Origin: Octopus sinensis
Lineage: Eukaryota
Assembly (NCBI RefSeq): GCF_006345805.1
Contig: NC_043006.1
Location: 24,862,001 to 24,926,000 of the forward strand
Length of the DNA stretch: 64,000 nucleotides
Direction of reading: 5' to 3'
A model generated the notes under the pieces. The model saw nothing but the letters and a program-made list of their open reading frames with translations. It was not told the DNA's origin and did no database searches. Both the position numbers and the translations under genes were made by a program. Positions 225 through 59,742 of this stretch are shown here, piece by piece (position 1 is the stretch's first letter; each line of letters begins with the position of its first letter).

Positions 225-435
225 TCTTAAAGTCAGTGAGCTGGCAGAAGGATTAGAGCATCCAAAAAAAAAAAAAGAACTTTTAGTTTTTGTTTCAGTT
301 CTACATTCTAAGTTCAAAATCTACTAAGATCAACATGGCCGTTCATCCCTCAAGGGTCAATAAAATAAAATACCAGTCAACTAACACCCTTTCTTCCAAA
401 CTGTTGATCTTGTGAATAAATTAGAAACCATTATT
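225..435 (+). mobile_element. Degraded tRNA-derived SINE (octopus OR1-like); a further relic lies at ~55-225
   Basis: gtgagctggcagaa head, gttcaaa B-box-like motif and (tta)n tail resemble the intact copies at 8030 and 51716. Confidence 0.6.
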
Positions 436-2336: not shown

Positions 2337-3579
2337 TCAGGTCATCCCATAAGTCCTGTCTGATATTACTTTTTTAAAACTGAATGAAATTTAATAGTAT
2401 TTTAGAATGTCTAATGGAATTATTTTTATGCATTTGTGTACATTTAAACTAATTAAATATTATTTTATAGAATAATAGAATTAAAATTTCTTTAATTAAA
2501 ACCCTTTTCTAACATAGAAGTATCCAAAGAGCACTTAAGGCACATAATGTTTTATGAGTACAACAAAAGAAACTCTGCAGCCAAAGCGACTCGAAACATA
2601 CACTCAGTTTATGGGAAAGAATGCTTGAATGAAAGAACTTGCAGAAGATGGTTTGCAAAATTCAGAAGTGGAGATTTCAGCCTTGAAGATGAAGATTGAA
2701 CAGGATGTCCAGTTGAGTTTGATGATAAGCTCCTTGAGGCATTACTTGAAGAAAATCCTGCATTATCATTTGAAGAATTGGCAATAAAGCTTAGTTCAAA
2801 CCATACAACTGTTCATTGTCATCTTCAACAACTTGGAAAGGTTCCCAAACTTGGAAAATGGGTGCCTCATGAATTGTCCGAAAGCAATCACAAATCCCGA
2901 GTTGACATCTGCTCTTCTCTCCATTCTCATGTGACTGGTGACGAAAAATAGATCTTGTATCAAAATGTTAAACATCGTAAATAGTGGCTTGGTAAAAGGG
3001 AAAAAGCTCAACCACAATTGAGAAGGGAACTTCATGGAAAAAAGATTCTTCTCTCTATCTGGTGGGAAGGCAAAGGAGTAATTCACTTTGAATTGTTACT
3101 ACCTAATGCAACAATCAATGCTCAAGTCTACTGTCAGCAATTAGAGCGTTTGAACCAAGCTTTAAAGAAAAAAAGACCCACTTTAGTGAATTGAAATGGA
3201 GTGATGTTTCATCAGGACAATGTGTGACCCCACACTGCAAAGATCACATCACAGAAGATTGAAGAGCTTGGTTGGGGAAAAATTCTTCATCCACCTTATT
3301 CTCCTGACCTTGCTCCTTCAGACTACCATTTGGTTCATACTTTACAGAATCATTTGGAGGACATAACTTTTGCAAGCCAGGAAGAGGTCAAAACCGACAT
3401 TTCTTTGCTTTGAAACCAAAAGAGTTTTACATTGATGGGATTAAAAAGCTTGTAAATAGATGGAAGGAAGTCATAGATAATCATGGAAAGTACATTGATG
3501 ATTAAATTTCAGTTAAATATAATATTTGATCACTTGTTTTCTTTATTCAAAATTCGGACAGAACTTATGGGATGACCTT
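2337..3579 (+). mobile_element. Mariner DNA transposon, near full length, with inactivated transposase (~2514-3505)
   Basis: TIRs aggtcatcccataagtcctgtctga / tcggacagaacttatgggatgacct; WVPHEL and YSPDLAPSDY motifs; ATG mutated to ATA, internal stops and frameshifts. Confidence 0.95.
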
Positions 3580-3790
3580 TTAAATGCTAATGTTTGTCTC
3601 TTAAAATTTTAATTCTTCCATTGAGTAGTTTCACCTTTCTCCCATCTTTGTATAATTTATATGGTCCTAACCCACATGTCTTTTCTTTGTTAATCCTTTG
3701 GTTAATATCTCTTAACATTTTTTAGCATTACTTTGAGTCCCTGTGGGTAATTAGGAAAAGATTGAAGGTGGGATATGTAGAGATTCCCAT

Positions 3791-4400
3791 TTGGTGTACG
3801 CTACAGAATGTATGAAAGAGAACTTGATTTATGTTGGTTGTACAACAGAACAATTAAACGAAAGGTTTAATGGGCACAGATTCGACGTCAGCTACAATGA
3901 CAGTAGTTGGATAGAACTTGCTAAACATTTCGTTTCAAGTGGCTACAATTTTGAAGAAGACTTGAAAGTGCATATTCTCAGAAAATATTCTGAATGTGCT
4001 TCATTTTCACTTCTCAGAATGTATGAGGAGAAATATGTTTGTGGGTTATTAACATCAAACCCTGGAGGAATTAATAAAATGACAGGAGAATATCATCAAA
4101 TTTATACAAAACTGTTTAAATATTCTTCTTTTTCTCTCTTTTCTTTCTTTTTTTTCTGTCTTTTTCTTTTTGCCTGTTATAAAATTGAAATTTAAAGACT
4201 GATGATGTCATTCCATCAACATGTGGACTCTTACTGCTCTCGTTCATACTTTACATTTAAATTTCTATAATTCTGAATTTTCATCACTTCTAATTTTGAA
4301 CTTGACAAAGACAGATTTACTGTTGAAATATTGTTCAACCAATAAAATATCTATTACAATCGAATCGCACTCTTCATCCTGACTGTCTACCTTTGTGAAG
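3791..4400 (+). mobile_element. Penelope-like element 3' fragment: GIY-YIG endonuclease plus pLTR relic
   Basis: ORF 3791-4195 VYATEC...IYVGCT...LNERFNGHR...GIN; decayed hammerhead-like CTGATGA...ACATGT at ~4200-4225. Confidence 0.8.
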
Positions 4401-4449: not shown

Positions 4450-5085
4450 TTTTTATGGTGGTGGTGAACTGTTAAACTCATTAGCACACTGGGCAAAATA
4501 CTCCAACATGTCATCCTTCTTTACATTTTGTGTTCAAATTTCACTGAAGTTTGTTTGACTTTGCATTTCATCTTTTCAGGGTTGATAAAATATGTATTAG
4601 TTGAGCACTGGGGTTGATGTAACTGACTTACCCCTCCTTTGAAATTGCTGGCCTTGTACCAAAATTTGAAATCACTGGTGTTATCATTATTAAGGTGGCA
4701 AGCTGGTGGAATTAATAGTGTGTTGAACAAAATGCTTAACAGCATTTCGTCTGTCTTTACATTCTGAGTTCAAATTCTGCTAAGGTTGACATTGCCCTTC
4801 ATCTTTTTGTGGTCAATGAAATAAGTGCCATTTGTGTGCCATGGTCAATGTAATTGACTAGCCCTCTCCTGACAATTTCAGGCCTTGTGCCTATAGTAGA
4901 AAGGATTATTATCATCACCATATATATGTGCTGGCATGGTTATGTGGTTATGAACTTCACTTCACAACCGCATGGCTCTGGGTTGGCACCTTAAGCAATT
5001 ATCTTTTACTATAGCCTCAGGATAACCATTGCCTCGTGAGTGAAATTGGTAGATAGAAACTAGGCAGGATGCCATATGTATGTGT
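4450..5085 (+). mobile_element. Cluster of degraded tRNA-derived SINEs (OR1-like and OR2/CORE-like)
   Basis: Repeated gagttcaaatt...ctttcatc motifs, tail ccttgtgcctatagtagaaaggattatt, and a CORE-like cttttactatagcc. Confidence 0.65.
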
Positions 5086-8029: not shown

Positions 8030-8253
8030 AAAGGTGGCGAGCTGGTAGAAACGTTAGCACACCGGGCAAAATGCGTAGCCGTATTTCGTCTGTCGTTACG
8101 TTCCGAGTTCAAATTCCGCCGAGGTCGACTTTGCCTTTCATCCTCTCGGGGTCGATAAATTAAGTACCAGATACGCACTGGGGTCGATATAATTGACTTA
8201 ATCCCTTTGTTTGTCCCCTCTGTGTTTAGCCCCTTGTGGGTAGTAAAGAAAGA
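8030..8253 (+). mobile_element. Young full-length tRNA-derived SINE (OR1-like) with 17-bp TSD
   Basis: TSD aatattcc(t/a)tgtatgta at 8013-8029 and 8254-8270; A/B-box-like head. Confidence 0.9.
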
Positions 8254-8339
8254 AATATTCCATGTATGTATATATTCCATTGCAGAGGTGTTGTTTATAT
8301 TTATCTCAGGACAGCTTTCTTTGCAGACGGTATTATCTT

Positions 8340-8520
8340 TTATCTTGTACTTGTTTCAATCATTAGACTGTGGCCATGCTGGAGCACCACACTGAAGAAT
8401 TTTTAGTTGAATGAATTGACTCCAGAATTTTTTCTAAGCTTGATACTTATTCTGAAAATCTCTTTTACTGAACCACTAAGTTACAGGAACATAAACACAC
8501 CAACACCAGTTGTCAGTTCT
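8340..8520 (-). mobile_element. 3' fragment of OR2/CORE-type SINE
   Basis: Reverse complement of the tail ggtgctccagcatggccacagtc...tgaaacaag seen at 38840-38900. Confidence 0.7.
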
Positions 8521-8619
8521 ACAGGAGATCAATTATAACAAATATTCCTTTTCAGATATAGTGAAAAATAGAAATGATTTTATGAAAGATAATCTATTAT
8601 TTTTATTGTCATTCTATTT

Positions 8620-9250
8620 ATAGTAGTAAAGAATGGACAACATTGTCCACAAGAACTCAGCTTTGTCATACAATACAAAAAGCAACAAACTAGTAGCAGA
8701 CTTAGTTAGGATAATGAATAATGTGTCCCCACTATGCGAACCCTATGAAACAAGGAATCATGCACAGAACTTCATGCACCACAAGCAATTCTCTGGATAT
8801 GACCAAAAAGATAGGATTCGTGTATACAGGGGAGCTAGAAAGAAGTTAGATAGCATCATATCTACCTAGATACAGAGGTAAAGAATGGAATATTATACAG
8901 TTTGTGACAAAGCAAACAGAAAGAACACATGGTACAGGGTTGACAAATATCAAGGAGTGATGTTTGCAGAGGCCACACCTGATGGGGAACTAGCCCGTAG
9001 ATTTAGAAGGCTCTGAAGTAGACCAAACTTAACACTTGAAGCAATATAATGACAAGAAACAGTCTTCCATACTCTATCAACATGCCAAAGACCAACATGC
9101 AGGCACACTGGGCCGACTTGACATCCACATTTTATCCAAGCACCTGAAGGACCCATCACTTAGACAAATACAGGAGTATGTCCTTATAAATGAAACATCC
9201 CCGTACAACATCGGAAATACACATAGAAGGTAGTGATATCCCAATACTCA
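8620..9250 (+). mobile_element. Degenerate Penelope-like element C-terminal region (RT thumb + GIY-YIG); tail resumes at ~9690-9790
   Basis: HKNSALSYNTK...FSGYDQKDR and SSILYQHAKDQH...IHILSKH...RQIQE; same family as 16678-16900. Confidence 0.65.
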
Positions 9251-9269
9251 TAGAATATACATACATAGG

Positions 9270-9680
9270 TACATTTACTGGTAGGCTGTTATGTAGGCAA
9301 ATATATATATATAGGTAGGTAGGTAAATGGATATGTTGGTAAATAAATAGATACATAGGTAAGTAGATAAACAGGTACATAGGTAATATGGACAGACAAG
9401 CACACACACGCACACTAAAGGAGATGGAAACACATGACCATACTCACACACACACTCCACACAGGCATACACATAAACACACTCAAACACACACATACAA
9501 GGAAGCACACATACACACACATATACACAAGCATGCACACACATATAAACACATGAATATGCAGAACACATACATATGTACACACACATATATACATGCA
9601 TACACACACATGCATACATACATATGTGCATAGACAAGCACACATGCATGCTGGCACGCACATATGCACACAATCAGACA
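9270..9680. repeat. Compound (TAGG)/(CA)/(TACA) low-complexity tract
   Basis: Read directly. Confidence 0.85.
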
Positions 9681-9897
9681 AAAGGAATGCAGCTCAGATA
9701 AGGGACAGAGTCAACATCCATTGACAAGGTTGCAAAGCAATTAAAATTTTGGAGAAGAAAAAATATGAATAAATGAGTGAAAATTGAACCAGTGAGTGTG
9801 TTAGATATTAAGGCAGTATGACTCTCCCCAGACACCACAAAATTTGTTTCACTACACAAATTCACAAAAAGAATCTTGCAAATCAGATACAAAACAC

Positions 9898-10062
9898 TAT
9901 TAATCAAAGTATACAGTAATATAGATTCATTTCAGCTGATCTTAGCAATCAATTTCATACAAGATATTAGGTACTTAGATGATTACCTAAGACTGGCTCA
10001 TCAAAGTAGCTACTATAGAAAGAATGGGGACAGCTCTCAGTTACTGAGGGGAGGAAGTGTCA
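9898..10062 (-). other. Intronic inverted copy of exon 10556-10708; putative editing-complementary sequence (ECS)
   Basis: 9898-9917 is the exact reverse complement of 10681-10700; 9975-9995 matches 10648-10668 at 19/21; 10035-10062 matches ~10581-10608. Confidence 0.8.
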
Positions 10063-10555
10063 CACCTGGTTTGTGGGTGTTGCAAAAAAAATAAAACGAT
10101 GCCATGGGAGATGATTAATGATTGAATTCAATCAAGAGTTACCCAAAATGCCTGAGTGAGTCACTGCCAGCAAAGTGGAGTTTGGGTGTGAGTAGTAAGG
10201 ATTGATATATGTACAGGGTGTGTGTGCGAGGAAGAGGGTGTGGATATGCTCCCAAAACCATAAACTCTGTGTTAGTGCATTCATGTATTTATGTGTATGT
10301 GGTTGAGTGTCATCAATATTTTGCTGGGCTCTCAGTTTATGGTGGTGAAATGATTAATGATTATAAACATTAGGGCTTCCTAACATTTTATAATCATGGT
10401 GGAGTCATTAGGTAACTAATCACATATTTTCTTTCATGTGATCACAAGCTGAAGATTTCAGTTTTGCAGTATAGGTAGATGTATGTGTGAAGAGAGCTCT
10501 TTAAGGCTGAGAAAAAAAAACTATAATAAAGAAGCCTCTTTACCCAAGAACCTAC

Positions 10556-10708
10556 CTGAACTGCAAGAAGGAAATTTTCTGGCACTTCCTCACCTCCAAT
10601 ACAGAGATCCATTCTCATATTTTCCCTAACTACCACACTGATAAGTGCAGTCTTAGGTAATTGTCTAATGGATCCATAAAACTGTATACTTTGATTAATA
10701 TTCTTCCT
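10556..10708 (-). CDS. Internal coding exon of unidentified minus-strand gene (RKNINQSIQFYGSIRQLPKTALISVVVRENMRMDLCIGGEEVPENFLLAVQ)
   Basis: Acceptor tatttgtctgcag, donor CAG|gtaggt, 153 nt = 51 open codons (phase 0/0), protein-like composition. Confidence 0.8.
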
Positions 10709-10831
10709 CTGCAGACAAATACATAAGTGTTAATTTTTTCTGATTTATGGATTCTTAGATGACTTACATGCTCCCATGTGTTGCAGAGTATATGGCAATA
10801 GGCCACTTACAATTTGTGACATATATATATA

Positions 10832-11561
10832 CTAGCTTAAGGTGACCGCTCTACGTGCGGGTGAGGTTGTGGTTGTTACTTTCTGTCGCTTCCTTTCTGT
10901 TTCTTATCGCCACATTCTCCCTCTTTGTTTCTTTATCCTTTCTCATTTTCCTACTCTCTTACTCTTCCTTTATCTCAGACTTTCCCTCGCTTTTTCTTAC
11001 TCTTTATCTATCTCTCTGCCATTTATAAAAAAGATTAGATTTCTGCGTTTAAATTACAAATCCGCTTCCACTTTACCATGTTGAAAATTTGATTGAAATC
11101 GGGCAAAAGGTGTCTGATCTAGACCACCAAGTGTCCCCCAAAATCAATAAAATCCCAGTTTTCACACCAAAGCAACCACTGTAGTGCCACAAAACGTCTC
11201 CCAATCAATTTCCACCCTCAAGTTACCCCCTCCTGTAAATTTGAATCCTCTTCCAGCCCCATTTAGACCCCTTTTTACATAAAAATTCAATCTGTATCTA
11301 CGTTCGCCTTCTTCATTTTATAGATAGGATTAGATGCCAATCACACCAATCTGGAGGGGCTTAGAGCCCCCTTGAATCTTCTCACCATAGCAACCACATC
11401 TTTCCAGATGGTGAGTTTCAACCTACTCAACTTGCCTCATCACGCCTTCTATGCCTGTATCGATTTTCAGCTCGATCTGACCACTGGTGTGGCCGCCAAC
11501 CTCTGACGTAGCAAAACGTGCACACAATTTTGACCCAAAGCCTCTTTTATATATATAGATA
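10832..11561. mobile_element. Non-autonomous interspersed element, possibly Helitron/Helentron-related
   Basis: Starts with (TA)n-ctag...gaccgctctacgtgcggg, ends ttttatatatatagat; non-coding and GC-richer than flanks. Confidence 0.4.
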
Positions 11562-13137
11562 TAATGATCTTATGGTTTGCAATACCAACTTCAGAGAACC
11601 TGCCAGTCACCTAGTCACCTATCGTTCTGGCAGACACACTAGCCAGATTGACTACATCTTCACCAGAAAAAGGGAAAGCAGGCTGCTTATAAATGCCAAA
11701 ACCTTCCCAGGCAAAGAATGTACCCATCAACATAGATTAGTAGTTAGCGACTTCAGGATCAGGGCTAAATGGTTGCCCAGAAGATCAGCTTGGAGGAGAA
11801 GGGTCTGGAAGCTTAAAGATCTTGCAAATGGACAGAGATTTAGAGACTTACTACTCGAAGCCTTCGATGAAATAGAAGGGGATATAGCATCACATAATGT
11901 GGAAGACAACTGGAGGTTTCTATGGAACAACCTGCTGAGAACCACTGACCAGATCTGTGGATGGAGCAAAGTCCCATTTCGACCCAAGGTAACGTGGTGG
12001 TGGAACAATGTGGTTGACAGGGCTATTAGACAAAAGAAACAGGCTTGGAGGGACTGGAAGAACGGAAGTAGCAGGGAATTATATCAGACTGCCAGAAGGG
12101 AAGCTAGGAAACAGGTTTATTTAGCCAGAGGGGAAGCAGATAAAAAATTTGCCAATGTTCTGTGCCATGAGGACCAAAGACTTGAAGTATTTCGTGTTGC
12201 AAGACAGTGCGTGAGAGAGAATCGTGATGTGGTAGGAGAGAAATGTGTCCGTATGGATGATAGTTCACTTGCACTAAATGAGGCTGCAAAGAGAGAGGTT
12301 TGGAGACGCCACTATGAAAGGTTGCTCAATAAAGAGAATGAATGGGAGAAAGAGAGTTTGCCGAGTGTCTACCCAACAGCGGGACCAGCTATCCGAATTG
12401 ACAGTACCTTGGTAGTTAAGGCAATTAGAAGCATGAAGACAGGGAAAGCCCCAGGCCCATCAGGAATTACTGCAGAGATGCTCAAAATATCAGGCAGTGT
12501 CGGCTATAGCCTAGTCACCCGTATAGTTATCCAGGTGATACATGAAGGAGTCATACCCAATGACTGGTGTAGCAGCATAATAGTCAACTGCTATAAAGGT
12601 AAAGGTGATGCTCTAGATACAAATAATTACAGAGGTATCAAGTTGCTGGATCAAGTAATGAAGGTCATGGAGAGGGTCATAGCCCAACTAATTAGAGAGA
12701 AAGTCCGTTTAGATGAGATGCAGTTTGGGTTCGTGCCAATGAAAAGTACCACTGAAAAGTACCATGGTAAGACAGCTGCAGGAGAAATACCTAGCCAAAG
12801 ATAAACCTCTGTACCTGGCTTTCATTGATATGGAGAAGGCCTTTGACAGGGTCCCCCGATCCCTTATCTGGTGGTCAATGAGGAAACTAGGGATAGATGA
12901 ATGGTTAGTGAGAGCCATGTACAGGGACGCTGTTAGTAAGGTGAGGGTTGGCAACGAGTACAGTGAAGAATTCTGGGTGGAGGTAGGGGTCCACCAAGGT
13001 TCAGTCCTCAGCCCCCTCCTATTTATCATAGTCCTCCAGGCAATAACGGAGGAATTCAAGACAGGATACCCCTGGGAGCTCCTCTATGCTGATGACCTTG
13101 CTCTAATTGCTGAGTCACTATCAGAACTGAAGGAGAA
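11562..13137 (+). mobile_element. RTE-clade LINE internal fragment (APE endonuclease end + RT), frameshifted and truncated at both ends
   Basis: SQIDYIF, HQHRLVV, KAPGPSG, NYRGIKLL, DMEKAFD, GVHQGSVLSPLLF, LLYADDL motifs in ORFs 11518-12804 and 12764-13204. Confidence 0.95.
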
Positions 13138-13175
13138 AATCCCCCTCCTATTTCTTCATTTTTCGCTTTTTTCTG

Positions 13176-13250
13176 TAACCCTAACCCTAATCTTAAAACC
13201 CTAACCCTAACTCTAAAACCCTAAACCTAACCCTAAAACCCTAACCCTAC
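13176..13250. repeat. Degenerate telomeric (CCCTAA)n array inside an element fragment (13140-13260)
   Basis: taaccctaaccctaa...; leader sequence shared with 44490-44530. Confidence 0.85.
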
Positions 13251-18060: not shown

Positions 18061-18374
18061 GTGTTCATTAGATTTAATATTTTATAGTGTTAACTGAGGG
18101 AGATCAAATCATCCCTTAGTCTCCCAGTTAACAATTAACTCAGTTTGTGACTTTTGCACTTGAAATTGGTACATATTGTATCAACCTAGAACAATTCATT
18201 GCATAAACAGAAAAAGTTGAAGATTAGAGAAAAAAAAGCAAAAAAACTCAGCAATAACAAAAACGTAGCATGAATGTATAATATATACATATATAATATA
18301 TATTTATATATATATAGTATATATATACAATATGTGTATTCATATATATATATATAGAGAGAGAACATCTATAT

Positions 18375-19591
18375 TGTTACGGAATGGACTGGAATCGCCC
18401 GTCGTCGTCGCTCGCCCGAACGGCTCACACAAGTTCCGCCACGGAACCCAAAGAGGCGGAGAGAGGAGATACAGATAGATACTGCCACAACCTCAACAGC
18501 ACAGAGATACAGAGGCACAACCCGAGATACAACCCAAAGAGGCAAGGCAACAACTGGCAACACTGGCTTATATTCAAACAACAGTTTATACGACAATTAC
18601 AATTGCTACACATCAAATACATTTAAAGCATACATTTAAAGGAAGACATGCACGTGACTACTCAATACATCATACAACAGATCAAAGCATAATACAACAG
18701 CATGTAACAATATAACAGTCCGGAGACACAACAAGTCCAGATCAAATAATGTTCACGATACGTCACAGTCCAATCAGAACACTTCGATACATTATACAAT
18801 GTTCGTATCACAACAATTCACGTTACAATTCAACAAGTCCTTTACTCAATTCACAATGTTCTTTATTGACTACATCGACAGAGTCCTTCTTTTTCTCTCT
18901 TCACTGTTCAATACACAAATCACATACCTTAATTCCCAACTGAATCGCCAGTGTCCCATCCTGCACCTCATCTCTCCGTACCGCTAATTCCCCTGTACAT
19001 ATTCCCTTCTGTGCCGCCAAGTTCTCTCGCATCCCAACTTGCTCCTAAGATTCCAACGCTTGCTCCTTAAATCCAAGGTTCCATCCACTCGCTCTGACCT
19101 CCAGAGTCCGTCTCTCTTCTTCGACGACCAGCCACGACCGCAAGATCCGTCTGTGTTCTTCGACGACCGCTCAACGACTGCCCAGACCTCACTTCCTCTC
19201 TGTCCTCGCTTCCACTCCCTCATCTCCCTCTTTCTATATCGCTCTTACCCTTTCTAACTGCCCTGGTCCTTATACCCTATCTATATCGCCTGCTGTCTCT
19301 TAACCTTTCTATTTGCTATCTGATTCCTTACTCTATCTATATCGCCTGCTGTCTCTTAGCCTCTCCATCCGTCCCCTACTGCTTATACCCTATCTCTATT
19401 TGCTCTCAGCCCTTAATCTGTCCCTTTTCTCTTACATTCTCACTGACCCTTTTCTCAACCGCACGAGGTCACAGGTCATTCCAAAACCCATCAGTCCTCC
19501 ATTAGACAAAAGACTGTCACATTTTCACCAGACATGATGGTGCCATAATTCCTAAGTGGGTCACCAGAAATGCACTTAGCCAACCGTAACA
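18375..19591 (-). mobile_element. Solo LTR (~1217 bp), probably Gypsy type, with 4-bp TSD ATAT
   Basis: Termini TGTTACGG...CCGTAACA; atat on both sides; AATAAA on the minus strand near 18865; internal short tandem repeats. Confidence 0.85.
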
Positions 19592-19766
19592 ATATATATA
19601 AAATATATATTTATATATATATAATATACATATATATGGTATATATTTATATATGTATAGTATATATATATATATATATGTATATATAATATAATATTTA
19701 TATGTGTGTACCGTTGGCGATTTTTTTTCCTCTGTTTTCCCTTCTCTGGATCTTTCCTTTTCCTAT

Positions 19767-20257: not shown

Positions 20258-20379
20258 GAACTTTAAAAATATTAATATTAATATTAATATTACTATACTA
20301 AACATGATACATGTATTACTTGATATATAAAAAATAAACAGTAAACAAATATCCAAATATACATACAATAAAGAAGAGG

Positions 20380-21700
20380 AGAAATAGAAATAGGAAGATC
20401 ATCTGGTCCACACCTCCCTACTCACCCGAGGTGACTTTCAATATAGGTAAATATTTCTTAGCACTGATAGATCGACATTTTCCAGTTAACCATACATACA
20501 GGAAGCTCTTCAATAAACACAATTTAAAAATTAGTTTCAGCTCAACTACCAATTTTTAAAAATATAATCGCACATAACACACAAAAACCACAATGCAAAA
20601 ACAGCTGTTCATGCAAGAATAAAAAATTGTGCCCGCTAAATGGAGCTTGCATGTCCGAGACCATCATCAATGAAGCTACTATGGACTCTATAACCACTAA
20701 AGACACTGTTTCGACGAAGAAATACATGGGCCTTACAGAGGGTAATTTCAAGACCTGGTTCAATAACCACACCTTGAGTTTTAGGCACTGGGACAAAAGG
20801 AAAGCGACAAAATTATCCAATCATATATGGTTATTAAAAGATAAAGGTGTCAGTTACAACATCCATTGGAAGATTTTAGCCAAATGTAAGCCCTACACCA
20901 ACAGCAGTGGAAAGTGCAGTCTATGCGACATGGGCTTATCTGGAAAAGCAGTTTAGACCCTGCTACATGTCTAAACTCAAGGACAGAACTTTTCGGATCA
21001 TGCCCACACGTGACCAAATTTTTGTTATGTTTTTGGTCGCCCCAAGACTACAGATAAAACTTGCTTTCTATATTATGTCCATGCAAAAGTTTTTTTATCT
21101 CATTATACCTTTTACTTTTATTTTTTCATATATTTTTATATATATATTATTGAGAATTTGGTTTATAGATATATTATTTTTTACACATAATAATTTTTTC
21201 TGTACTCTACCTTCCATTCTGCATTTTTCTCTGTGCCTATATAGACGTGTATATGGATTCATTTGTACATGTGTGTGGATATATACGAGTGGGCGGGTAT
21301 ATATGTATATAGATGTGTGCGTGTGCATGGGCATAAGAATACATATATATATATATATGTATGAGTTTGTATATATATGCATGTATATTTGGCGAAAAAT
21401 GCGAGTGAAGATGTGTACATTTTCATAGTGATGTATACGTATGCACGTGGGTGCGCGAGCGCACATGTGTATGTATGAACAAGCATGCTTACGTGTTTAC
21501 TATGAACTTTTAACCTTATCTTAATTAGTGGTCATTCGAATTAGTGCTTTTGTATAAGTAGCAGAGTATAACACAGTAATTTCCCTTTGTATAACAGGTG
21601 TTTTTTCATAGCGTTTTTCAGATGGCCAGATAACTAAAGAGATGGTGGTGTGGATTTCCACCTCGGCATCCGTACATAATATTGAGGTCTCTTCCTTTCT
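20380..21700 (+). mobile_element. Penelope-like 3' fragment (linker + GIY-YIG + tail)
   Basis: CPLNGACMSETII...KYMGLTEGNFKTWFNNH...ATKLSNHIWLLK...IHWKIL...KCSLC. Confidence 0.85.
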
Positions 21701-22729: not shown

Positions 22730-23830
22730 TATAGAGAAAGTCTTCGAACACGACTTCAGAGAAGACATCAAGAAAAAGTGGAAACGCTACCTCGATGACT
22801 GTTTCGTCTTTTGGAACAGATCAGAAAAAGATCTACAAACATTCCACAACATCCTCAACATACTGCACCCATCTATCAACTTCACGATAGATACCAGCCA
22901 CAATGAACTTCCCTTCCTAGACATTATCATCAAGATATACAACTCCCTCGTCACAACAGACATCTACTACAAAAAAACACCAATGTTTAAATTTCTACTC
23001 CTGTCACCCATCCCACATAAAAAGAAACATTCCATATAGTGTGGCAAGATGCATATGCAGCATAGTAACCAACTCACAAACATACCAAATAAGACTAAAT
23101 GAACTTAAAAACTTCCTACTAGAACAAAAATACTCACTCAAATTAATAAAAAACAGAATCTCAAGAGCAATGAAACTGGACATCACACAACTCAGAACTA
23201 CAAAAACGAAAAACAAAGAAAACATCACCCCCTTCATAAACGCACACAACACTGGAGTTACCAACATGTTTCAAATCATACATTCAAACTTATCAGTAAT
23301 CCTACAAACCCCCAAAATGGGAAACATAATAAACAAATATTGCATAAAAAACAGTAAACGCCAAGACAAAAAACTGAAGAAACAACTAACAAGAGTGAAA
23401 TTCTCATCAAAGACTAAAACCGAATTCTTTGTAAAAGAGTGCGGAGATGGTAGATGTGGGATCTGCAGTAACCCCATCTACAAATATATAGAGGGAAACA
23501 AACAAATAAAATTTAAGAGTGGTCACACATTCAAAGTAAATGCAGACATGAATTGCAAGATGCAGAACATAATATACTGCATAACCTGCCCCAACATGCA
23601 AGGAGAATTATATAGGCGAAACTGGAAATTCTTTATGCCAACGAGCCAGAATTCACCGACAACATGTCCAACAGGAGGAACTGCGAAAGATTCCACTGAA
23701 TAAACACTTAGATACATGTGGAGAAGGAAAATTTAAGATCTTTCCCTTCTATAAATGCCCATGGAATGACACCTTCTTCAGGAAAAATATGGAAAAATCC
23801 TTCATAACTAAGTTCTCCTCCAAACTGATT
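22730..23830 (+). mobile_element. 5'-truncated Penelope-like element (RT C-half + GIY-YIG), frameshifted
   Basis: [41 protein letters not shown] motifs. Confidence 0.9.
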
Positions 23831-23989
23831 GGCTGAAAATATTTCTGTAATGATTTGTACTGGATGAAGGATCAATTTTGTAAAGTAAATTTTATTAAAC
23901 ATATACACACACAGAGTACATATACATAAATAGAAAGGATTTTACATCCAGATTCTCCAACCTATATCAGCACAGGAATTAAACATTGG

Positions 23990-32305: not shown

Positions 32306-34640
32306 CAAGTGGAGTTGTAGGGTACCGCACGAGTGGAATTATCTATTTCAAGGGACACTGTAGGTGAGTTTGGGTGGGGGGAAGGAAGAGTAATGTGGAA
32401 CTGAAAAGAATTTCTCCTTTTTGTCTCTCCTTCATGCATCAATGATTTGGGGGATTGGCTTTAGAGATCAGGATGGTTCGAGTGTGTGTATATATACATA
32501 TGTGGTGTGAATAGATGTGTCTGTGTGTTTGTAAAATCTGGTAGGATGGTGTGTGTATATGTGTGCCCGTTTGTATGTGTGTGGTTAATGTTTGTTAGTG
32601 TGTTGCGTGTGCGTTAGTGTGTATGTGTTTGTTCGTATGTGTGTCCATGTGTGTTGGGTTTGTCTGGGTGGCAAGTGTGTGTTTATACGTTTTGTTTGTG
32701 TTGGTATTGAGTATCTGTTTGTGTGTGTGCATATATATGGTGCCAGTGTGTGTGCGTATATATGGTGCCAGTGTGTGTCTTTGATGTGTTTGTTTTGGAT
32801 GTGTGCCTGGGGGGTATATTAGAGTATGTTTAGTTGTAGTCTGTATTTTTGAATAAGATTATTTTCCCTATTTATTCATGTTTGGTCTGTGGTGTTGTCT
32901 GGGCATTGGTATTGTGGGGAAACTAAGAATTTGGGGGACTTATTGTGTGCACAGAGGTCTAAGTGTCCACTAAGTGGTATCTGTCTTGTGGTGGGGTCCC
33001 TCAGTTGTTGGCAATGAACTGTCATCCTTTCTCTGAGGGTAAGGCTCGTTTGCCCTATGTAGTCTTTGTGGCACCCTTCACACCTTATGACATAGAGTAA
33101 ATTTTTTTGATGCGCAGGTGAAATTATTTTTATGATAAAGTGTGTCCTGACTGGAACTTGTACGTTGATCCCCCAATGAGGTGGATGCAAGTCTTGCAGT
33201 TGGAACGACCACATTTTTTGACGGTGGGCAGTGGGTTTGTGTTATGTAATTTTGCGTTGATGAGTAGGTTTTTTAGGGATTTAGGTTGTCTCTTACTTTT
33301 ATTATTTTATGAGCTGCGAGTAATTTTTTTAGGCGTGGGTCTTGATTTAGCTGTGGAATGTTGTATATAATAGTGTAAGCTTCTGCATTTCTTTGGTTGT
33401 TTGTTGAGAGATAGGGGAGGCTATTTACTGTACTGTGGATGTGTTTTGGTTTTCGTAAGTCTTGAGTGTTAATTGATTTGGCCCGTTCTATTCCGTTGTC
33501 CACTAGTGATGCTGGGTAATGTCTTTCGAGAAGAATTGCCCTTAGTTCTCGGAGTCTTCTATCTTGTGTTGTGTCATTTGAGACAATTATGCAGATTCTT
33601 CTCACTAGGTTGAAGGGGATATTTGTCTTTGTGTGCTTTGGGTGATTGAAGGTGAATAGAAGGTATTATTTAGAATCAGTGGGTTTGTAATGGATGTCAG
33701 TTTCAATGTTGACGCCTTTTTTAATGATTAGAATGTCAAGAAAAGGGAGTTGGTCCTGACTATATTCCATTGTGAATTGGATGTGGTTATTTACACTGTT
33801 GATAAGGTTTTTGAAGTCAATAAGTTGGTCGAGTGTGTGGGACCATAGGATGAGGCAATCATCTAAGTAGCGTTTCCAGTTCTCCAACAGGTATTTGTGG
33901 AAAGACTGGCCATACTTATATTTGGATTTTTCATAAATATGTGATTCCAGGTAGGCCATCACCAGATTTGCATAGGTAGGGGCAACTTTCGTACCCATTG
34001 CAGTTCCTGAAACCTGTCTGTAAGTGTTATTATTTAAATTCATAAAGTTGTTTTGCAGAATAAATTTGAGGCCCTCAATGATGAATTCTTTTTTTATTCT
34101 TTCCGAGATCTCATTGGGATACTTATCCAGCCGGAATTTAATGGCTTCCCGTCCATATTCATGTGGGATCGTAGTGTAGAGGTTTATTACATCAAAGGAG
34201 ACGATTAAAGTGTCTTTATCGGTATGTTTGGGGAGATGATTTAAAAGGTCTAGGTCATCTCTTACAATACTTGGAATGTGTTTCAGTATTGGTTTTAGGA
34301 TGATATCGATAAAGTTGCTAAGTCTGTGTTTCACAGCTTGGGCCTGCCACTATTGGTCTCAGTTTGAGATCAGTGGGATGTGGTATAGTGATGCAGGTTG
34401 AAGTGGACTTTTTGCAAGCTTCTGTGATAATTTCACTCTTATGTATTTTTGGAAGCCTGTAGAGCATGCTGGTTTTGCAATTAAAGTTTGTTATGTAGTC
34501 ACATTCCTTTACTGTTAAGTCATTCCAGTGTTGGTAAATGAGTGCCTTCAATTTGGTCATTATTTTGGATTGCTGGTGAGTTTCTTTTCCTGTTTTGTCC
34601 CCCAGTTTTGGGGTACAAGTCAATTAAATTGTTTTCGTTT
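31850..34640 (-). mobile_element. Penelope-like element, 5'-truncated, near-complete RT + GIY-YIG with stops and frameshifts; 3' tail and pLTR at 31850-32870
   Basis: LPKIHK, LRPIVAGP, SFDVINLYTTIP, YRQVSGTAMGTKVAPTYANL, WKRYLDD, LPFLDI, LLYVIRCEGCHKDYIGQT. Confidence 0.95.
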
Positions 34641-36044: not shown

Positions 36045-36499
36045 GTAAGTGGGGCACAATGAGTAATATTTACTCATTATAGTAGAAATGATCATCATAA
36101 TTATTATTACTCTTGGAGTGGAAAGCTGGCAGAGTTGTTAGTACTCCAGACAAAATGTTTTGAGGTATTTCATGTATTCACATTCTAAGTTCAAATTCTG
36201 CTGAGGTCAACTTTCCTTTTATCCTTTTGGGGTTCATGAATTAAGTACCCTCCCCCAAAATTTCAGGCATTGTGCCTATGGAAAGGATTACTGGAAACTC
36301 TTTTCCAAAATTCAGATGGCTCCCAATTCTTCATGCGAGTTAACTTTTTCTTGGTATGGGTTTATTTAAACAAACATTTAAAAAATGTTATCAAAAATTA
36401 AAGTTTGTAAGGAACAGTAAAAAAATAAAGATACTACTGTTTTTGCAGCGATAATATTTCATGTTGAATCAGCGATCATTCATTCATTATTGTAATATA

Positions 36500-36658
36500 T
36501 TTCTTTACTACCCACAAGGGGCTAAACATAGAGGGGACAAACAAGGACAGACAAAGAGATTAAGTCGATTACATCGACCCCAGTGCGTAACTGGTACTTA
36601 ATTTATCGACCCCGAAAGGATGAAAGGCAAAGTCGACCTCGACGGAATTTGAACCCAA
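36500..36658 (-). mobile_element. OR1-like SINE, 5'-truncated
   Basis: Reverse complement of the 3' two-thirds of the 8030 SINE. Confidence 0.9.
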
Positions 36659-37734
36659 TTCTGTCAACCCTCAGAAAACCCTCAGAAAAGTTTGTGATTA
36701 AAGTGGACTGCAATGTAATTTGAAAATAGTGTGCAAATGGAACTGAGAGACTGGGAAAAAAAATCAACATCTTAAGACATGAAATCTGAGGGAACCTAGG
36801 TGTGCATTTAGCCAAAGACTGTGGGCTCACCCAGACCAATTCATAGGAAAGAAAAGACATTTTTGTTATTTAATTTAGTCAAGATATCATTCTTTTGGTA
36901 GAGAATTCTTTTGTTACTAACAAGAGAATTCTCTTTGCATAAGATATGTTATTTGATCTGTATATGTCAAAAGTATAATGCTTGTTCTATCTTTCTATCC
37001 TTGTCTCTGTGATCATTGGGGCATTCATGGATGATGTTGCAGCCAGATTTCACCCCTTCTGCTGCCATCAGTGAGTCAGTAAAATTGGGGCCTGTTCACT
37101 TTTAGATGTTGATCCAAGCAACAACTGATTTGGTATGGACTCTGGTCTGGTTGTCATCATCATGTGTGTATCATGGGCAACTTAGCTTGGTGGTGCCTAT
37201 TCCTTTCTCAGTTGTTAACCGCAACCATACACCTCCACCACAAGCTTGCCTTGGCCTCAAACACTTGGCTATTGACCTGAGCAGGTTCCTCCACCCTAGC
37301 TGGTGATTCCTTGGGAAGCCTTACCCAGAGTCTTTCATCTACTTAGTGAAGTGGAGCATTGGGGTGTGTGGAACTAGGAATCATCAAGTGAGAGATGAGG
37401 AGTTGAATGAGGATCAGTGATAGCTGTCCACCTGACCTTCCCTGGCAAGGTACGGCTGCCAGACATCAGAGATACTACCTCCACTCTGTGACCTCTACAC
37501 TCCATGATGTATATAACCAAAATATAAGTGCAGTCATATTTTCAACTCACTTGCACTTTTACTTTTAATAACATTTTCTATCCAAAATACAACTATATCC
37601 AGTGACAACAAATTACTGCCAGCTCACTGTCTCTCTATCTCCAGTCTCGAGCTAATCGACTTTTTCGTTTTCCACATGAAACGGAAAATAAGGCTGGAGA
37701 AGAAATGCCTGCCGCAAAGTGTGTTTTGTAAAAG

Positions 37735-42405: not shown

Positions 42406-42739
42406 ATGTGTGTATGAAAGATAGATGTTTAGTGTTGTCACCTTTGTACCTAAGATCTCTTGAAGGATATATAGTTATTTTTGGGGGGTTGTGTGTGTGG
42501 GGAGGGTGTATATTTCTTAGCGTGTGCATGTGTTTGTTTCTGTGTCTTTCACTATATAGAAAACGCAATACAGACTTTCAAAAAGAAAACTTTCTCTTTG
42601 AATAGAAGAAGGGAAGAAGAAAAGGTTGTCTTTGAGAAAGAAATACAGTAAGACAAAGACAGAGAGGGAAAGAGAGATATATAGATCGGTATTGTTGTCA
42701 CCATAGTAACTAACAAGTTTTGATTAAAAATGCAGTATG

Positions 42740-43548
42740 CCAATTGGCAGTGGTGAGCATAGTCCTACTGCCGTGTGGTGCATCTTTGCTTTGCAGTGCT
42801 TCTCCCATTCATCGATTTTTGCAATGGCTGAAATGAAAGAACAATGTGCTTCTGTGAAATTCTGTTTTCTGCTGGGGAAAATGGCAGCCAAAACATTTGT
42901 CATGCTTCTAACAGCTTATAAGGATGCTGCCATGAGCAAAACACAAGCTTATAAGTGGTTTTCATGCTTTACGAATGGTCACTTGTTGCTTGAAGACCAA
43001 CCTTGTTCAGAGCGTCCATCGACCTCCTGAATGAAGGAAAACATCACGAAAATTTATGAACTGATCTTGAAGGACCATCACTGAACAATTGACGAACTTG
43101 TTGATATGACTGGTGTCTCCTGGAGCTCCTGCCAATTAATTTTGAGTGAGAAATTGCGAATGAAAAGAGTTGCATCATCAAGATTTGTGCCTTGCTTGCT
43201 CATGGAAGATCAAAAGCAGTCACAGTTTAATGCATGGTGTGAACTGAAAGAGCAGTTGGAAATTGATCTGGAGCTTTTTTCGAAGGTCATCAATGATGAC
43301 AAAAGCTAGTGTTACGGAATTAGCGGATGTGGAAGACGTGAAGAAAAAAATGACGGCATTAAAAGGCATCACTTTGTAAGGGGCATTAAGAGGCATAATT
43401 TTGCAAGAGTTCAAGTACTGCTTCAAAAACGTGTCTGGACCGATGCATTGCTTCAAATGGAGAATACCTTGAAAACAATAAAAGTGTAAACATGTAAACT
43501 AAGTGAATAAAATAATATTGCAAAATTCCGGTTTCTTTTGGGTACCTA
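42740..43548 (+). mobile_element. Internally deleted mariner relic
   Basis: MAEMKEQCASVKFCFLLGK...KTQAYKWF HTH region, RFVPCLL (WVPHEL-equivalent), right TIR-like aaattccggtttcttttgggtacc. Confidence 0.85.
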
Positions 43549-43629: not shown

Positions 43630-44355
43630 ATTTCTGTATGTTTTTCAGCATATAGACACAGACTTCAAAAAAAACTGGCACGAAACCACAATGACATCTT
43701 GGGTCATTGAATGACAAGGAAATCAGCTGTGAATATTCCATGTATCATGTTTTTGCCTAAATTTCCCGTCTTTTAAATTTGCGTCTAGTTTTCCATTTGC
43801 TCTACTTTCACTTAATTTTTCTCTTTGTTTTGTTCTTTATGTTCAACCTTTGATATATCCATGTAGCACAATGAACACTCTGTTTACTTTATTATAAAAA
43901 AATATTCATTCAATATTTATTGCGCGACTCTTACTCTATTTCTTTCCATCTCTACTCTTACTCAATCTCTTTCCATTTCTAGTCTTACCCTATCACTTTC
44001 CATCCTTGCTTGTCTCCCTTGTACCTTTCTTTTCTCACTCTGTGTCTCTCCCTTTTATTCTTCAGTCCCTCTGTCCTACCATGTGACTGGTGCAGTTCTT
44101 TTTTTTGACCTGCCTCTGACCAGACAGTTATGCTTATCTGAGCTCCTGCTATGTCCGCTTGGACTTTCTCTGTTTCATCTCTGACGCAGCCTCTAGCTCT
44201 GATTCATACCACTTTTCTGCTACTTTGTATCTATACACTCAGCTAACATTCCAATGCTCCCTTTTACTGATAGTCATTCCTGCATTTATATACTTTTTGT
44301 GCTAGTCTACTGCAAAGCACCATGCCATTATGTCTGTCCAGTAGCTGAAAAGTTT

Positions 44356-45075: not shown

Positions 45076-45509
45076 TAATGTATTTGTGGTATATGTATAA
45101 TTATTCTTTTCCTTCTGTTGTATAGCTGAAAGGCTTCATTCTATTATATATGCATAATTCTTTTTTTGTTGTATTTATAAATTTTTTGTTGTATACATAG
45201 TATCATTTCAGTTTTTTCCTGTCCTTGTATACATTTGTTAGCTTTTCCTCAGAAGCTTAATCCTCTGGTGCCTTTTGATATCTTGGGTCACTGACTGACA
45301 AGGAAATCAGCTGCAAATATTCTGTGTATTATGTTTTTACCTAAATTTCCGGTCCGTTGAGTCTTGTCTTCTGTTTGTTCTGCTTTCCTCTAATTTTTCT
45401 CTTTGTTGTGTTCTTTCTGTTCTAAATAAATGTTATTGTTCAACAGTATTCAAATTGTTACTAAGAAAGTCAATCTAAACATTATTTGCACAATTTAAAG
45501 TTTTGTGGA

Positions 45510-45690
45510 GAGGGGACTAGTCAATTACATCAACGCTAATATTTCTCTGGTACTTAATTTATCGACTCCAAAAGGATGAAAGGCAAAATTGACCTAAGTG
45601 GAATTAGAACTCAGAACATACAGATGGACAGAGTGCTGTAAAGCATTTCGTCTGGTGTGCTAATGATTCTGCCAGCTCACTGTCTTCATA
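45510..45690 (-). mobile_element. Degraded OR1-like SINE
   Basis: ggatgaaaggcaaaattgacct...aactcagaac...tgccagctcac. Confidence 0.75.
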
Positions 45691-45719: not shown

Positions 45720-46570
45720 GGGTGTGCAAAAGTATGCTGTATGTAGTGAAGGAAGAGTACCATTAGCAGCTAGAAATATCCTAAAAGTTACCAAAACAAT
45801 AAAAGAATTCAAGGACAGAAGAAAAAACAAGACAAATAACTGGACAGAGAAGGAATTACATGGCTAATTCATGCAACAAACTCAGGATATTTGAAGTAAA
45901 GAACACTGGTTGTGGCTGACAGGTGGAAATTTAAAGCAAGAAACCAAATTGCTAATTTTAGCCATTCAAGAACAAGAGATTAGAATGAAATTTGATGAAG
46001 ATAAGGATTTACAAAATTCACACAAGTGCAGAATCTGTGGAAAAGGAGATGAAAGTATTAACTGTTTCTTAATAGTGCAGTAGACTAGCACAAAATGTGT
46101 ATAAATGCAGGAATGACTGTCAGTAAAAGGGAGCATTGGAATGTTAGCTGAGTGTATAGATACAAAGTAGCAGAAAAATGGTATGAATCAGAGCTTGTGT
46201 CAGAGAATAATAATTATGGGATTTTATGGGATTCTTCCATAAAGACTGGCTATGTTACTGAAGCAAAATATATGATAGTAGAAGACAAAAAAGAGTAAGA
46301 TCATTGACTTTGAAGTACCATATAACAGAGTGGATACCAAAGAAACTGAGAAGTATCAGGGCCTAGCCTGAGAGATAAAGTGACTGTGGAAGACTAAGGT
46401 GACAACTGTTCTTGTAATTAGTGCATTTGGCACAACACCCAAACTGCTACCTTACTGGTTGAATGATATTGGAGTTGAGACACATTTTCAACCTGCAGAA
46501 AAGTGTAATTCTTATGAAAAATTCTTGAGATTTGAAGAGACTTGTTGCCACCAAACCCCAAGACAATACC
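45720..46570 (+). mobile_element. R4/Dong-type non-LTR retrotransposon 3' fragment (CCHC + restriction-like endonuclease), decayed
   Basis: LHG*FMQQ, WLTGGNLKQETK, KCRICGKGDES, ILWD, IIDFEVPY, EKYQGLA, AFGTTPK motifs. Confidence 0.75.
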
Positions 46571-46989
46571 TCTGCTAACTAATGTAGCATATAGTAGCTC
46601 TTCAAAGAATTTGGAATTACTATAAAATTATTCTTATCCTTATAGTGCTTGCAGCCATAGGAAGAGTTTCAAGAAGTTTGAGTGGTTGACTGAAGATATT
46701 AGGTATTAAGATGAATTTCTTGATTCTACAGAAAATATGTTTGCTTGGCATAGCAAGGATTATAAGAAAGATGCTGGATACTAAGATTGCAAGGTATGGC
46801 CTGACATCCATGTATCCAATACCAATAGAGCAAGAATGAAAAGCAGCTGTGTTTCGTTTCATACTTTCAGGGGCGATTAAATAAGTACCAGTGAGAGCAC
46901 TGAGGTTGATGTAGTTGACTAGCTCCCTTCTACATATTTCAGGCCTTGTGCCTATAGTAGAAAGAATTATTATCATAGAGTGAGGAAGT

Positions 46990-50741: not shown

Positions 50742-50969
50742 TATTTCTTTTACTACCCACAAGGGGCTAAACATAGAGGGGACAAACAAGGACAGACAAA
50801 GAGATTAAGTTGATTACATTGACCCAGTGCGAAACTGGTACTTTATTTATCGACCCCGAGAGGATGAAAGGCAAAGTCAACCTCGGCGGAATTTGAACTC
50901 AGAACGTAACGACAGACGAAATACCGCAAAACATTTCGCCCGGTGTGCTAACGTTTCTGCCAGCTTGCC
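50742..50969 (-). mobile_element. Young OR1-like SINE with 16-bp TSD, nested in the Gypsy element
   Basis: TSD gcttaaatttaatata at 50726-50741 and 50970-50985. Confidence 0.92.
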
Positions 50970-51715: not shown

Positions 51716-51950
51716 AAGGCGGTGAGCTGGCAGACACGTTAGCGCACCGGGCGGAATGTTTAGTGGTATTTCGTCTGTCGCTACGTTCTGAGTTCAAATT
51801 CCGCCGAGGTAGACTTTGCCTTTCATCCTTTTGGGGTCGATAAATAAAAGTACCAGTTTCGCATTGGGGTTGATGTAATCGACTTAATCCCTTTGTCTGT
51901 CCTTGTTTGTCCTCTCTATGTTTAGCTCCTTGTGGGCAATAAAGAAATAT
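51716..51950 (+). mobile_element. Young OR1-like SINE with 15-bp TSD, nested in the Gypsy element
   Basis: TSD atatgtcctatatta at 51701-51715 and 51951-51965. Confidence 0.92.

Positions 51951-59658: not shown

Positions 59659-59742
<84 letters not shown>

What the first reader, a model, noticed from the sequence alone, without database searches (positions are those of the whole stretch)
9898..10708. Exon with its own inverted copy in the downstream intron: candidate ADAR recoding hairpin
Seen in sequence: most of the 153-nt minus-strand exon (10556-10708) is repeated in inverted orientation at 9898-10062. The match includes a perfect 20-mer, a 19/21 block and a GAGGAAGTG block, interrupted by a ~45-nt insertion. 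In the pre-mRNA the two segments would pair. By my manual alignment, exon adenosines at 10662 (CAA to CGA, Q/R), 10620 (AAT to AGT, N/S), 10615 (AGA to GGA, R/G) and 10613 (silent) face C. Established: A-C mismatches in exon-intron duplexes are favoured ADAR targets, and coleoid cephalopods recode mRNA extensively. Inference: a local inverted exon duplication may have created an editing-complementary sequence de novo, a route to new recoding sites that does not need TE pairs. Other differences are ordinary transitions, so neutral decay is also possible.
Basis: partly seen in the sequence, partly recalled or inferred. Interest (0 to 1): 0.8.

Follow-up and report, generated by a model that had tools for sequence, protein, structure and literature searches.

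The report
Decayed inverted repeat around an unproven exon
A stretch of about 125-165 bases really is repeated in inverted orientation half a kilobase away and would fold into a long imperfect RNA hairpin, but nothing shows that one arm is a real coding exon or that RNA editing uses it, so it is most likely an ordinary decaying inverted duplication in repeat-rich non-coding DNA.

Summary
10578-10705 is repeated in inverted orientation at 9893-10064, with a perfect 20-mer, a 19/21 block, GAGGAAGTG and a 45-nt insert. The match is far above chance. As minus-strand RNA the arms pair in the minimum-energy fold (z = -7.5; duplex gain -41 kcal/mol against -7 for shuffles). The adenosines at 10662, 10620, 10615 and 10613 face C, with the stated codon effects.

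The interpretation has no support beyond that:
- The "exon" has no relative among 1.84 billion representative proteins.
- Its splice-like ends and open frame occur about once per window by chance.
- No non-transposon protein domain was found on either strand of the 64 kb.
- Differences between the arms fall 8/8/8 over codon positions.
- Transitions split evenly into pairing-preserving G·U (6) and pairing-breaking A·C (8).
- Two of the five A·C sites have the disfavoured 5' G.
- The window holds seven inverted pairs within 2 kb, and this is the weakest.

Most likely this is an old local inverted duplication decaying neutrally. Transcription, splicing and editing cannot be tested here. Human coding sequence paired with an inverted duplicate as the editing partner is already described (PMC8897444). 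Interest is low.

The parts
10556..10708 (-). Putative 153-nt exon. The frame is open (RKNINQ...LLAVQ), with an AG acceptor (ttgtctgcag|AGG) and a CAG|GTAGGT donor. Exon status is unproven. The open frame actually runs 10445-10729 (95 codons), 37 codons past the putative donor.
   Evidence: No homologue. Exon-like features are at chance level.
10578..10705 (-). Right arm of the inverted repeat. It lies inside the putative exon.
9893..9931 (+). Left arm, segment 1. It matches 10705-10667 at 85% and contains the perfect 20-mer 9898-9917. In the exon's frame it carries a TAA stop.
9932..9974 (+). The insertion in the left arm. 9947-9974 is a second, more decayed copy of exon bases 10696-10670 (a partial tandem duplication). 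It forms a large internal loop in the fold.
9975..10064 (+). Left arm, segment 2. It comprises the 19/21 block (9975-9995), a weaker 43/69 stretch, and GAGGAAGTG. It pairs with 10668-10578.
9869..9897 (+). Possible outer extension of the repeat. It matches 10756-10727 in the putative upstream intron. A 26-nt gap removes the acceptor and the first 8 exon bases from the copy.
   Evidence: Marginal on its own (34 of 500 shuffles as good).
10727..10756 (-). Partner of the outer extension, upstream of the putative acceptor.
10065..10577 (.). Spacer (loop) between the arms, about 0.5 kb. It holds small local hairpins, for example around 10350-10400. It has no ORF with a homologue and no Rfam family above the gathering score.

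Best explanation
This is an old local inverted duplication. Its arms are about 125-165 bp, possibly about 215 bp with flanks, and the spacer is about 0.5 kb. It lies in a short unique island of repeat-rich, AT-rich non-coding DNA, either an intron or intergenic.

Shown:
- The two arms are homologous.
- The left arm later gained a partial tandem duplication and several indels.
- The arms now differ at about 20% of aligned bases.

Inferred:
- The duplication arose at the DNA level, by fold-back or template-switch repair, not from mRNA. The similarity seems to run into the flank, and the copy lacks only a 26-nt piece around the acceptor.
- Both arms have since drifted neutrally.
- The open frame with splice-like ends in the right arm is most likely fortuitous.

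If the region is transcribed in either direction, the arms would form a long imperfect hairpin. That would be a generic ADAR or Dicer substrate, edited promiscuously, not a site-selective recoding device. The A·C mismatches are the ordinary outcome of transitions in one arm of an inverted repeat.
For: - The inverted repeat is significant and unique within the window.
- The fold and duplex energies are far beyond shuffles.
- Differences are uniform over codon positions, 8/40, 8/39 and 8/40. There are 14 transitions and 10 transversions. Transitions split 8 pairing-breaking (A·C or C·A) against 6 pairing-preserving (G·U or U·G).
- The copy has at least four stops in the exon frame, plus indels.
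- The peptide has no homologue.
- Exon-like candidates of equal quality are expected about 1.07 times per window by chance, and 3 were observed. One of those lies inside a LINE ORF.
- No non-transposon Pfam family was found on either strand. The same method recovered mariner domains, so it does work.
- Close inverted pairs are common here. There are 7 within 2 kb, and this one is the weakest.
Against: - The protein libraries seem to lack this genome and its close relatives. The window's LINE reverse transcriptase finds nothing above 46% identity over most of its length. The negative homology result therefore excludes only a deeply conserved exon.
- A 51-residue query is short.
- The acceptor and donor are good (8 of 9 donor positions match the consensus). 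The exon arm kept an open frame while the copy did not.
- With only 24 differences, the codon-position test has little power.
Confidence: 0.55

Rival explanations
1. 10556-10708(-) is a real coding exon, and 9893-10064 is its own inverted copy in the downstream intron. In the pre-mRNA the two pair and recruit ADAR. Exon adenosines are then edited, including the A·C sites at 10662 (Q/R), 10620 (N/S) and 10615 (R/G).
For: - The duplex is real and strong, with a 20-bp perfect helix that is long enough for ADAR binding.
- The A·C mismatches and codon effects are as stated.
- Splice-like boundaries and a single open frame are present.
- The exon arm is open while the copy has stops.
- An A opposite C is a favoured editing configuration, and coleoids recode heavily (established knowledge).
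- A coding sequence paired with an inverted duplicate as the editing partner is documented in human (PMC8897444).
Against: - No evidence for the exon.
- No sign of coding or pairing constraint in the divergence pattern.
- 10615 and 10613 have a 5' G.
- 10662 sits in a tandem C·A/A·C mismatch next to the 45-nt loop, and it is unpaired together with its neighbours in the minimum-energy fold.
- The organism and any transcription are unverified.
Confidence: 0.17
2. The two arms are the long terminal inverted repeats of a non-autonomous DNA transposon or foldback element of about 890 bp (9869-10756). Alternatively they are two inverted copies of a dispersed repeat. Either way the 'exon' is repeat sequence.
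For: - The whole unique island between a microsatellite tract (about 9250-9700) and truncated LINE sequence (from about 11500) is essentially the foldback.
- Four of the seven close inverted pairs in the window are made of an abundant dispersed repeat.
- Pairing may extend to 9869/10756, beyond the open frame.
Against: - There is no other copy of either arm in the 64 kb. There was no match in the metagenome scan either, though that scan is hardly informative for an animal genome.
- No target-site duplication is visible at 9869/10756 (read directly).
- No transposase or other transposon protein signal lies in or between the arms.
Confidence: 0.2
3. The similarity is a chance or low-complexity artefact.
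For: The region is AT-rich, and the weaker third block is only 43/69 identical.
Against: - 0 of 500 shuffles reach the alignment score.
- E = 5e-8 and 7e-6 against the whole window.
- There is a perfect 20-mer and a colinear 19/21 block.
Confidence: 0.02

Closest known systems
Exon-intron duplexes with an intronic editing complementary sequence (GluA2 Q/R and R/G sites, Gabra3 I/M, Drosophila Syt1)
   Same: A sequence downstream, on the same strand, is complementary to a candidate coding segment. The duplex is imperfect and has A·C mismatches at would-be recoding positions. The spacing is a few hundred bases (PMC3479170 and PMC5705066 for the known cases).
   Different: - In the known cases the exon, the editing and the cross-species conservation of the partner sequence are all demonstrated. 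None of these is shown here.
- The known partner sequences are not recognisable copies of the exon.
Human coding-sequence editing clusters whose partner is an inverted paralogue downstream (e.g. TOR1B, CLDN9; Gabay et al. 2022, PMC8897444)
   Same: Duplicated coding sequence in inverted orientation supplies the complementary strand, so no transposon pair is needed.
   Different: - In those cases the partner is a whole neighbouring gene reached through an extended 3'UTR, and editing is measured.
- Here the partner would be a 165-nt intronic fragment of the same exon, and editing is unmeasured.
Inverted repeat pairs in introns and UTRs that form long dsRNA and are edited promiscuously (inverted Alu pairs and the like)
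   Same: Two inverted copies lie within 1 kb and give a long imperfect duplex. The window contains six stronger examples of the same geometry.
   Different: The arms here are not members of a repeat family seen elsewhere in the window.
Inverted-duplication model for new hairpin genes (plant MIR genes arising from inverted duplication of their target gene; own knowledge)
   Same: A local inverted duplication of a gene segment creates a hairpin that is complementary to its source.
   Different: That model concerns a different pathway (Dicer and miRNA) and a different kingdom. It is an analogy only.

Membership tests
Site-selective ADAR recoding substrate (exon plus intronic editing complementary sequence) | The target adenosine lies in a bona fide coding exon of an expressed gene | tested here: inconclusive
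   - An open frame and AG/GT boundaries are present.
- No homologue was found.
- The features are at chance level.
- No host-gene domains were found in the window.
- The protein libraries appear to lack close relatives of this genome.
Site-selective ADAR recoding substrate (exon plus intronic editing complementary sequence) | A complementary sequence in the same transcript forms a stable imperfect duplex with the exon | tested here: met
   - The minimum-energy fold pairs the arms, z = -7.5.
- Cofold gain is -41.2 kcal/mol against -7.2 +/- 2.3 for shuffles, with a 20-bp helix.
- This is conditional on transcription of the minus strand, which is untested.
Site-selective ADAR recoding substrate (exon plus intronic editing complementary sequence) | A-to-G differences between RNA and DNA at the sites | not testable with these tools
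   No RNA-seq data or transcript collection for this organism is reachable.
Site-selective ADAR recoding substrate (exon plus intronic editing complementary sequence) | The partner sequence and its pairing are conserved or co-vary across related species | not testable with these tools
   - No orthologous loci could be retrieved.
- Within the locus, transitions show no bias towards pairing-preserving G·U (6 against 8).
Site-selective ADAR recoding substrate (exon plus intronic editing complementary sequence) | Favourable neighbour context (5' U or A, not G) | tested here: inconclusive
   The 5' neighbours are C (10662), C (10646), A (10620), G (10615) and G (10613). One is favourable and two are disfavoured.
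Foldback element or miniature inverted-repeat transposon | Terminal inverted repeats | tested here: met
   The inverted arms reach 9869 and 10756.
Foldback element or miniature inverted-repeat transposon | Target-site duplication flanking the ends | tested here: not met
   The flanks ...TTCACAAA|AAGAATC and GATTCTT|AGATGACT share no direct repeat. An old duplication could have decayed.
Foldback element or miniature inverted-repeat transposon | Multiple dispersed copies in the genome | tested here: inconclusive
   There is no other copy in the 64 kb. The whole genome is not available.
Inverted pair of a dispersed repeat (Alu-pair type dsRNA) | Both arms belong to a repeat family with other copies | tested here: not met
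   There are no further copies in the window. By contrast, the abundant repeat that makes four other inverted pairs has at least 10 copies.

The most novel reading that the evidence does not exclude
The open frame is a genuine lineage-specific coding exon. A local inverted duplication of the exon itself created an intronic editing partner de novo. Exon G-to-A substitutions then became A·C sites whose editing restores the ancestral residue (R, S, G). That would be a transposon-independent birth route for recoding sites.
Probability: 0.12. Interest if true: 0.6.

Novelty: new member of a known kind. Interest (0 to 1): 0.2.

Why it matters
If the exon and its editing were real, this would be a clear example of how a recoding site can be born. 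The exon would duplicate in inverted orientation into its own intron. The hairpin would exist immediately. Later transitions would create A·C sites.

That would bear on the debate over whether coleoid recoding is adaptive or 'harm-permitting'. The principle, duplicated coding sequence serving as the editing partner, is already documented in human, so the gain would be incremental.

As things stand, the locus shows only that decayed inverted duplications, which are common in this window, automatically produce editing-like A·C geometry. That is a caution for sequence-only predictions of recoding hairpins.

Tried and rejected
1. Homology of the 51-residue peptide. I searched Pfam, PDB sequences, the word-indexed search of 5.8 billion clusters and the exhaustive HMMER scan of 1.84 billion representatives. 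Nothing credible came back. The two hits were translated tandem repeats.

2. Positive control for the libraries. The window's LINE reverse-transcriptase ORF finds at best 46% identity over most of its length, and 52-57% over partial matches. One partial relative sits on a 2.7-kb contig of assembly GCA_024449705.1. The source genome and its close relatives therefore seem absent, which weakens the negatives.

3. Exact look-ups of ORFs over both arms and of the LINE ORF in the assembly collection returned none.

4. One metagenome scan with a 32-nt degenerate arm pattern returned 0. I did not use the second scan. Animal DNA is not expected in that collection.

5. Host-gene search. I scanned stop-free segments of both strands against Pfam and found only mariner domains.

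6. Rfam on 8500-11600 gave only sub-threshold miRNA-like hits in the CA/TA-rich tract at 9511-9678, which are low-complexity artefacts. Nothing fell in the arms.

7. Codon-position and transition-type tests for selection showed no signal, but power is low.

8. Extension of the repeat beyond the arms is marginal on the acceptor side and absent on the donor side and further out.

9. Literature searches for inverted exon duplication as the origin of an editing partner found no direct precedent for the intronic self-copy. They did find the inverted-paralogue case.

10. The shifted frame shared by both arms (LIKVYS...YLRL) had a very low chance of a hit.

Full report
**1. The observation**

- The repeat finder reports arms 9893-9931 / 10667-10705 (39 nt, 85% complementary) and 9975-9995 / 10648-10668 (21 nt, 19/21).
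- A gapped alignment adds 9996-10064 ~ 10646-10578 (43/69, ending in GAGGAAGTG). It confirms the perfect 20-mer 9898-9917 and a 45-nt insert at 9930-9974.
- The alignment of the left segment against the reverse complement of the open frame scores 39.5, against 14.3 +/- 2.6 for shuffles. None of 500 shuffles is as good.
- blastn against the whole window gives E = 5e-8 and 7e-6 and finds no third copy.

Two refinements follow.
- The 'insert' is not foreign. 9947-9974 is a second, weaker copy of exon bases 10696-10670, so the left arm carries a partial tandem duplication.
- Colinear matches continue into the putative upstream intron (9869-9897 ~ 10756-10727). A 26-nt gap removes the acceptor and the first eight exon bases from the copy. 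On its own this extension is marginal (34 of 500 shuffles as good). There is no extension past the donor.

**2. The hairpin**

- Folded as minus-strand RNA, 9860-10760 has a minimum free energy of -242.1 kcal/mol. Shuffles give -192.2 +/- 6.7, so z = -7.5.
- The minimum-energy and centroid structures both pair the two arms, from 10756-9869 inwards to 10583-10059.
- Cofolding the 153-nt open frame with 9890-10070 gains -41.2 kcal/mol over the monomers, against -7.2 +/- 2.3 for shuffled partners. There are 107 intermolecular pairs and a longest uninterrupted helix of 20 bp.
- A10620, A10615 and A10613 sit in small internal loops opposite C.
- A10662 is opposite C in the ungapped 19/21 block. There it is part of a tandem C·A/A·C mismatch next to the large loop made by the 45-nt insert.
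- A fifth A·C site at 10646 (GCA to GCG, silent) was overlooked.

**3. Is the right arm an exon?**

The sequence shows one open frame of three. It also shows an acceptor ttgtctgcag|AGG and a donor CAG|GTAGGT. Everything else I could test is negative or neutral.
- The peptide has no Pfam or PDB match. It shares no three 5-residue words with any of 5.8 billion protein clusters.
- An exhaustive HMMER scan of 1.84 billion representatives found only two proteins that are translated tandem repeats.
- I checked what that negative is worth. The window's own LINE reverse-transcriptase ORF (11518-12801) finds nothing above 46% identity over most of its length. The source genome and its near relatives therefore seem absent from the libraries. 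The negative excludes a deeply conserved exon but not a lineage-specific one.
- As a null model I counted open segments of 120-300 nt with a YAG acceptor, at least 65% pyrimidines upstream and a donor matching at least 8 of 9 consensus positions. These thresholds were set at the candidate's own values. The window has three such loci, one of them inside a LINE ORF. First-order Markov shuffles give 1.07 per window. The exon-like features are therefore about what chance supplies once per window.
- The open frame is not confined to the putative exon. It runs 10445-10729, 37 codons past the donor.
- Stop-free segments of the minus strand gave no Pfam family, neither all those of at least 35 residues from 1 to about 16.5 kb nor the non-transposon ones of at least 50 residues elsewhere. 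The plus strand gave only mariner Transposase_1 and HTH_48 at 2496-3191. That hit shows the method can see domain fragments.
- The window is dominated by transposon remains, read from the translations: RTE-like LINEs at 11512-13201 and 59707-62650, Penelope-like ORFs, mariner and a gag-like ORF.

I put the probability that 10556-10708 is a real coding exon at roughly a quarter.

**4. Signs of selection in the divergence**

- Over 119 aligned positions the arms differ at 24, falling 8, 8 and 8 on codon positions 1, 2 and 3.
- There are 14 transitions and 10 transversions.
- The transitions split into exon-A/copy-G 5, exon-C/copy-T 3, exon-G/copy-A 3 and exon-T/copy-C 3.

There is no excess at synonymous positions, which gives no support for coding constraint. 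Power is low, because the copy's own neutral changes are uniform. There is no excess of pairing-preserving G·U outcomes (6) over pairing-breaking A·C outcomes (8), which gives no support for selection on the duplex. There is no significant excess of the exon-A-opposite-C class.

The copy has at least four stops in the exon's frame and several indels.

**5. Suitability for editing**

An A opposite C is edited better than an A-U pair, and ADARs disfavour a 5' G (established knowledge). The five sites have 5' neighbours C, C, A, G and G. Only 10620 is in a good context, and the proposed R/G site and its silent neighbour are in the worst.

The 20-bp perfect helix (10681-10700) holds several A-U pairs. 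In a long duplex these would be edited too. If the RNA exists, promiscuous editing is the more natural expectation.

**6. How unusual is the geometry here?**

A self-comparison of the window finds seven inverted pairs with arms less than 2 kb apart at E < 1e-3. The pair under study is the weakest (48 bits). The strongest are 247 bp at 89% and 137 bp at 92%.

Four of the seven are built from one abundant dispersed repeat with at least ten copies in the window. The studied pair and two others have no further copy.

Independent insertion of two members of a family that has no other copy in 64 kb is unlikely. The arms therefore most likely arose together, by a local inverted duplication or as the ends of a single foldback-type insertion. 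I see no target-site duplication at 9869/10756.

**7. Explanation and rivals**

- Best supported (about 0.55): an old local inverted duplication in non-coding DNA, later modified by a tandem slip and indels and decaying neutrally. The open frame is fortuitous. If transcribed, it is a generic dsRNA substrate.
It remains possible because its decisive tests (spliced reads, RNA-DNA differences, conservation) are out of reach here.
- A foldback or other repeat origin of both arms (about 0.2): this needs the whole genome to test.
- Chance similarity: excluded.

**8. Relation to what is known**

- Exon-intron editing duplexes are classical (reviewed in PMC5705066; Gabra3 in PMC3479170).
- Human coding editing clusters whose partner is an inverted paralogue downstream are described in PMC8897444. 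The idea that duplicated coding sequence can serve as the editing partner without transposons therefore has precedent.
- I found no paper describing an exon paired with its own intronic inverted copy.
- The plant model of miRNA genes born by inverted duplication of their targets is an analogy from my own knowledge.

**9. Verdict**

The feature is an ordinary member of a known kind, and interest is low.

Noticed in passing
window 303-368, 4481-4895, 8036-8258, 36117-36695, 45461-45677, 46852-46978, 50737-50980, 51709-51954: An abundant dispersed repeat of about 150-250 bp, probably SINE-like, with at least 10 copies in the window. Its translation recurs as ...FKFRRGRLCLSS.... It forms four inverted pairs within 2 kb. 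One of them, 50737-50980 / 51709-51954 (247 bp, 89%), is a far stronger dsRNA candidate than the finding.
   Followed up: partly
window 44178-44314 and 46076-46206: An inverted pair of 137 bp at 92% identity, with a 1.8-kb spacer and no other copy in the window. It is younger and cleaner than the studied pair. Its origin was not examined.
   Followed up: no
window 18213-18382 and 19584-19755: An inverted pair of 173 bp at 72% identity, with no other copy in the window. It lies in a C-rich, skewed stretch (GC skew -0.30 at 18-20 kb).
   Followed up: no
window 11512-13201 (+) and 59707-62650 (+): - Two RTE-like LINE remnants carrying the C-terminal part of the endonuclease plus the reverse transcriptase.
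- The first is 5'-truncated about 0.8 kb from the studied hairpin.
- The best database relatives reach only 46% identity over 93% of the query, so close relatives of this genome seem absent from the protein libraries.
   Followed up: partly
window 2496-3191 (+), also 42728-43306 (+): Mariner-type transposase remnants. Pfam HTH_48 and Transposase_1 hit at 2496-3191. The second locus was recognised only by eye from its translation.
   Followed up: partly
window 3755-4192 (+), 20338-20953 (+), 22921-23833 (+), 32879-34623 (-): ORFs that look like Penelope-like elements (reverse transcriptase with a GIY-YIG-type tail). This is judged from the translations only and was not tested against a family library.
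   Followed up: no
window 9250-9700: A CA/TA-rich imperfect microsatellite tract directly next to the hairpin. It gives sub-threshold Rfam hits to mir-297, mir-466 and similar families (best 44 bits against a gathering score of 90). These are low-complexity artefacts.
   Followed up: yes
window 48350-48551 (array context 48209-49035): A tandem array with a 62-nt unit, 3.3 copies at 92% identity. Further diverged copies on both sides give long open frames on both strands.
   Followed up: partly
They share LIKVYS...D.YLRL. This is probably coincidence, but it shows that the open frame is not unique to the 'exon' reading.
   Followed up: no
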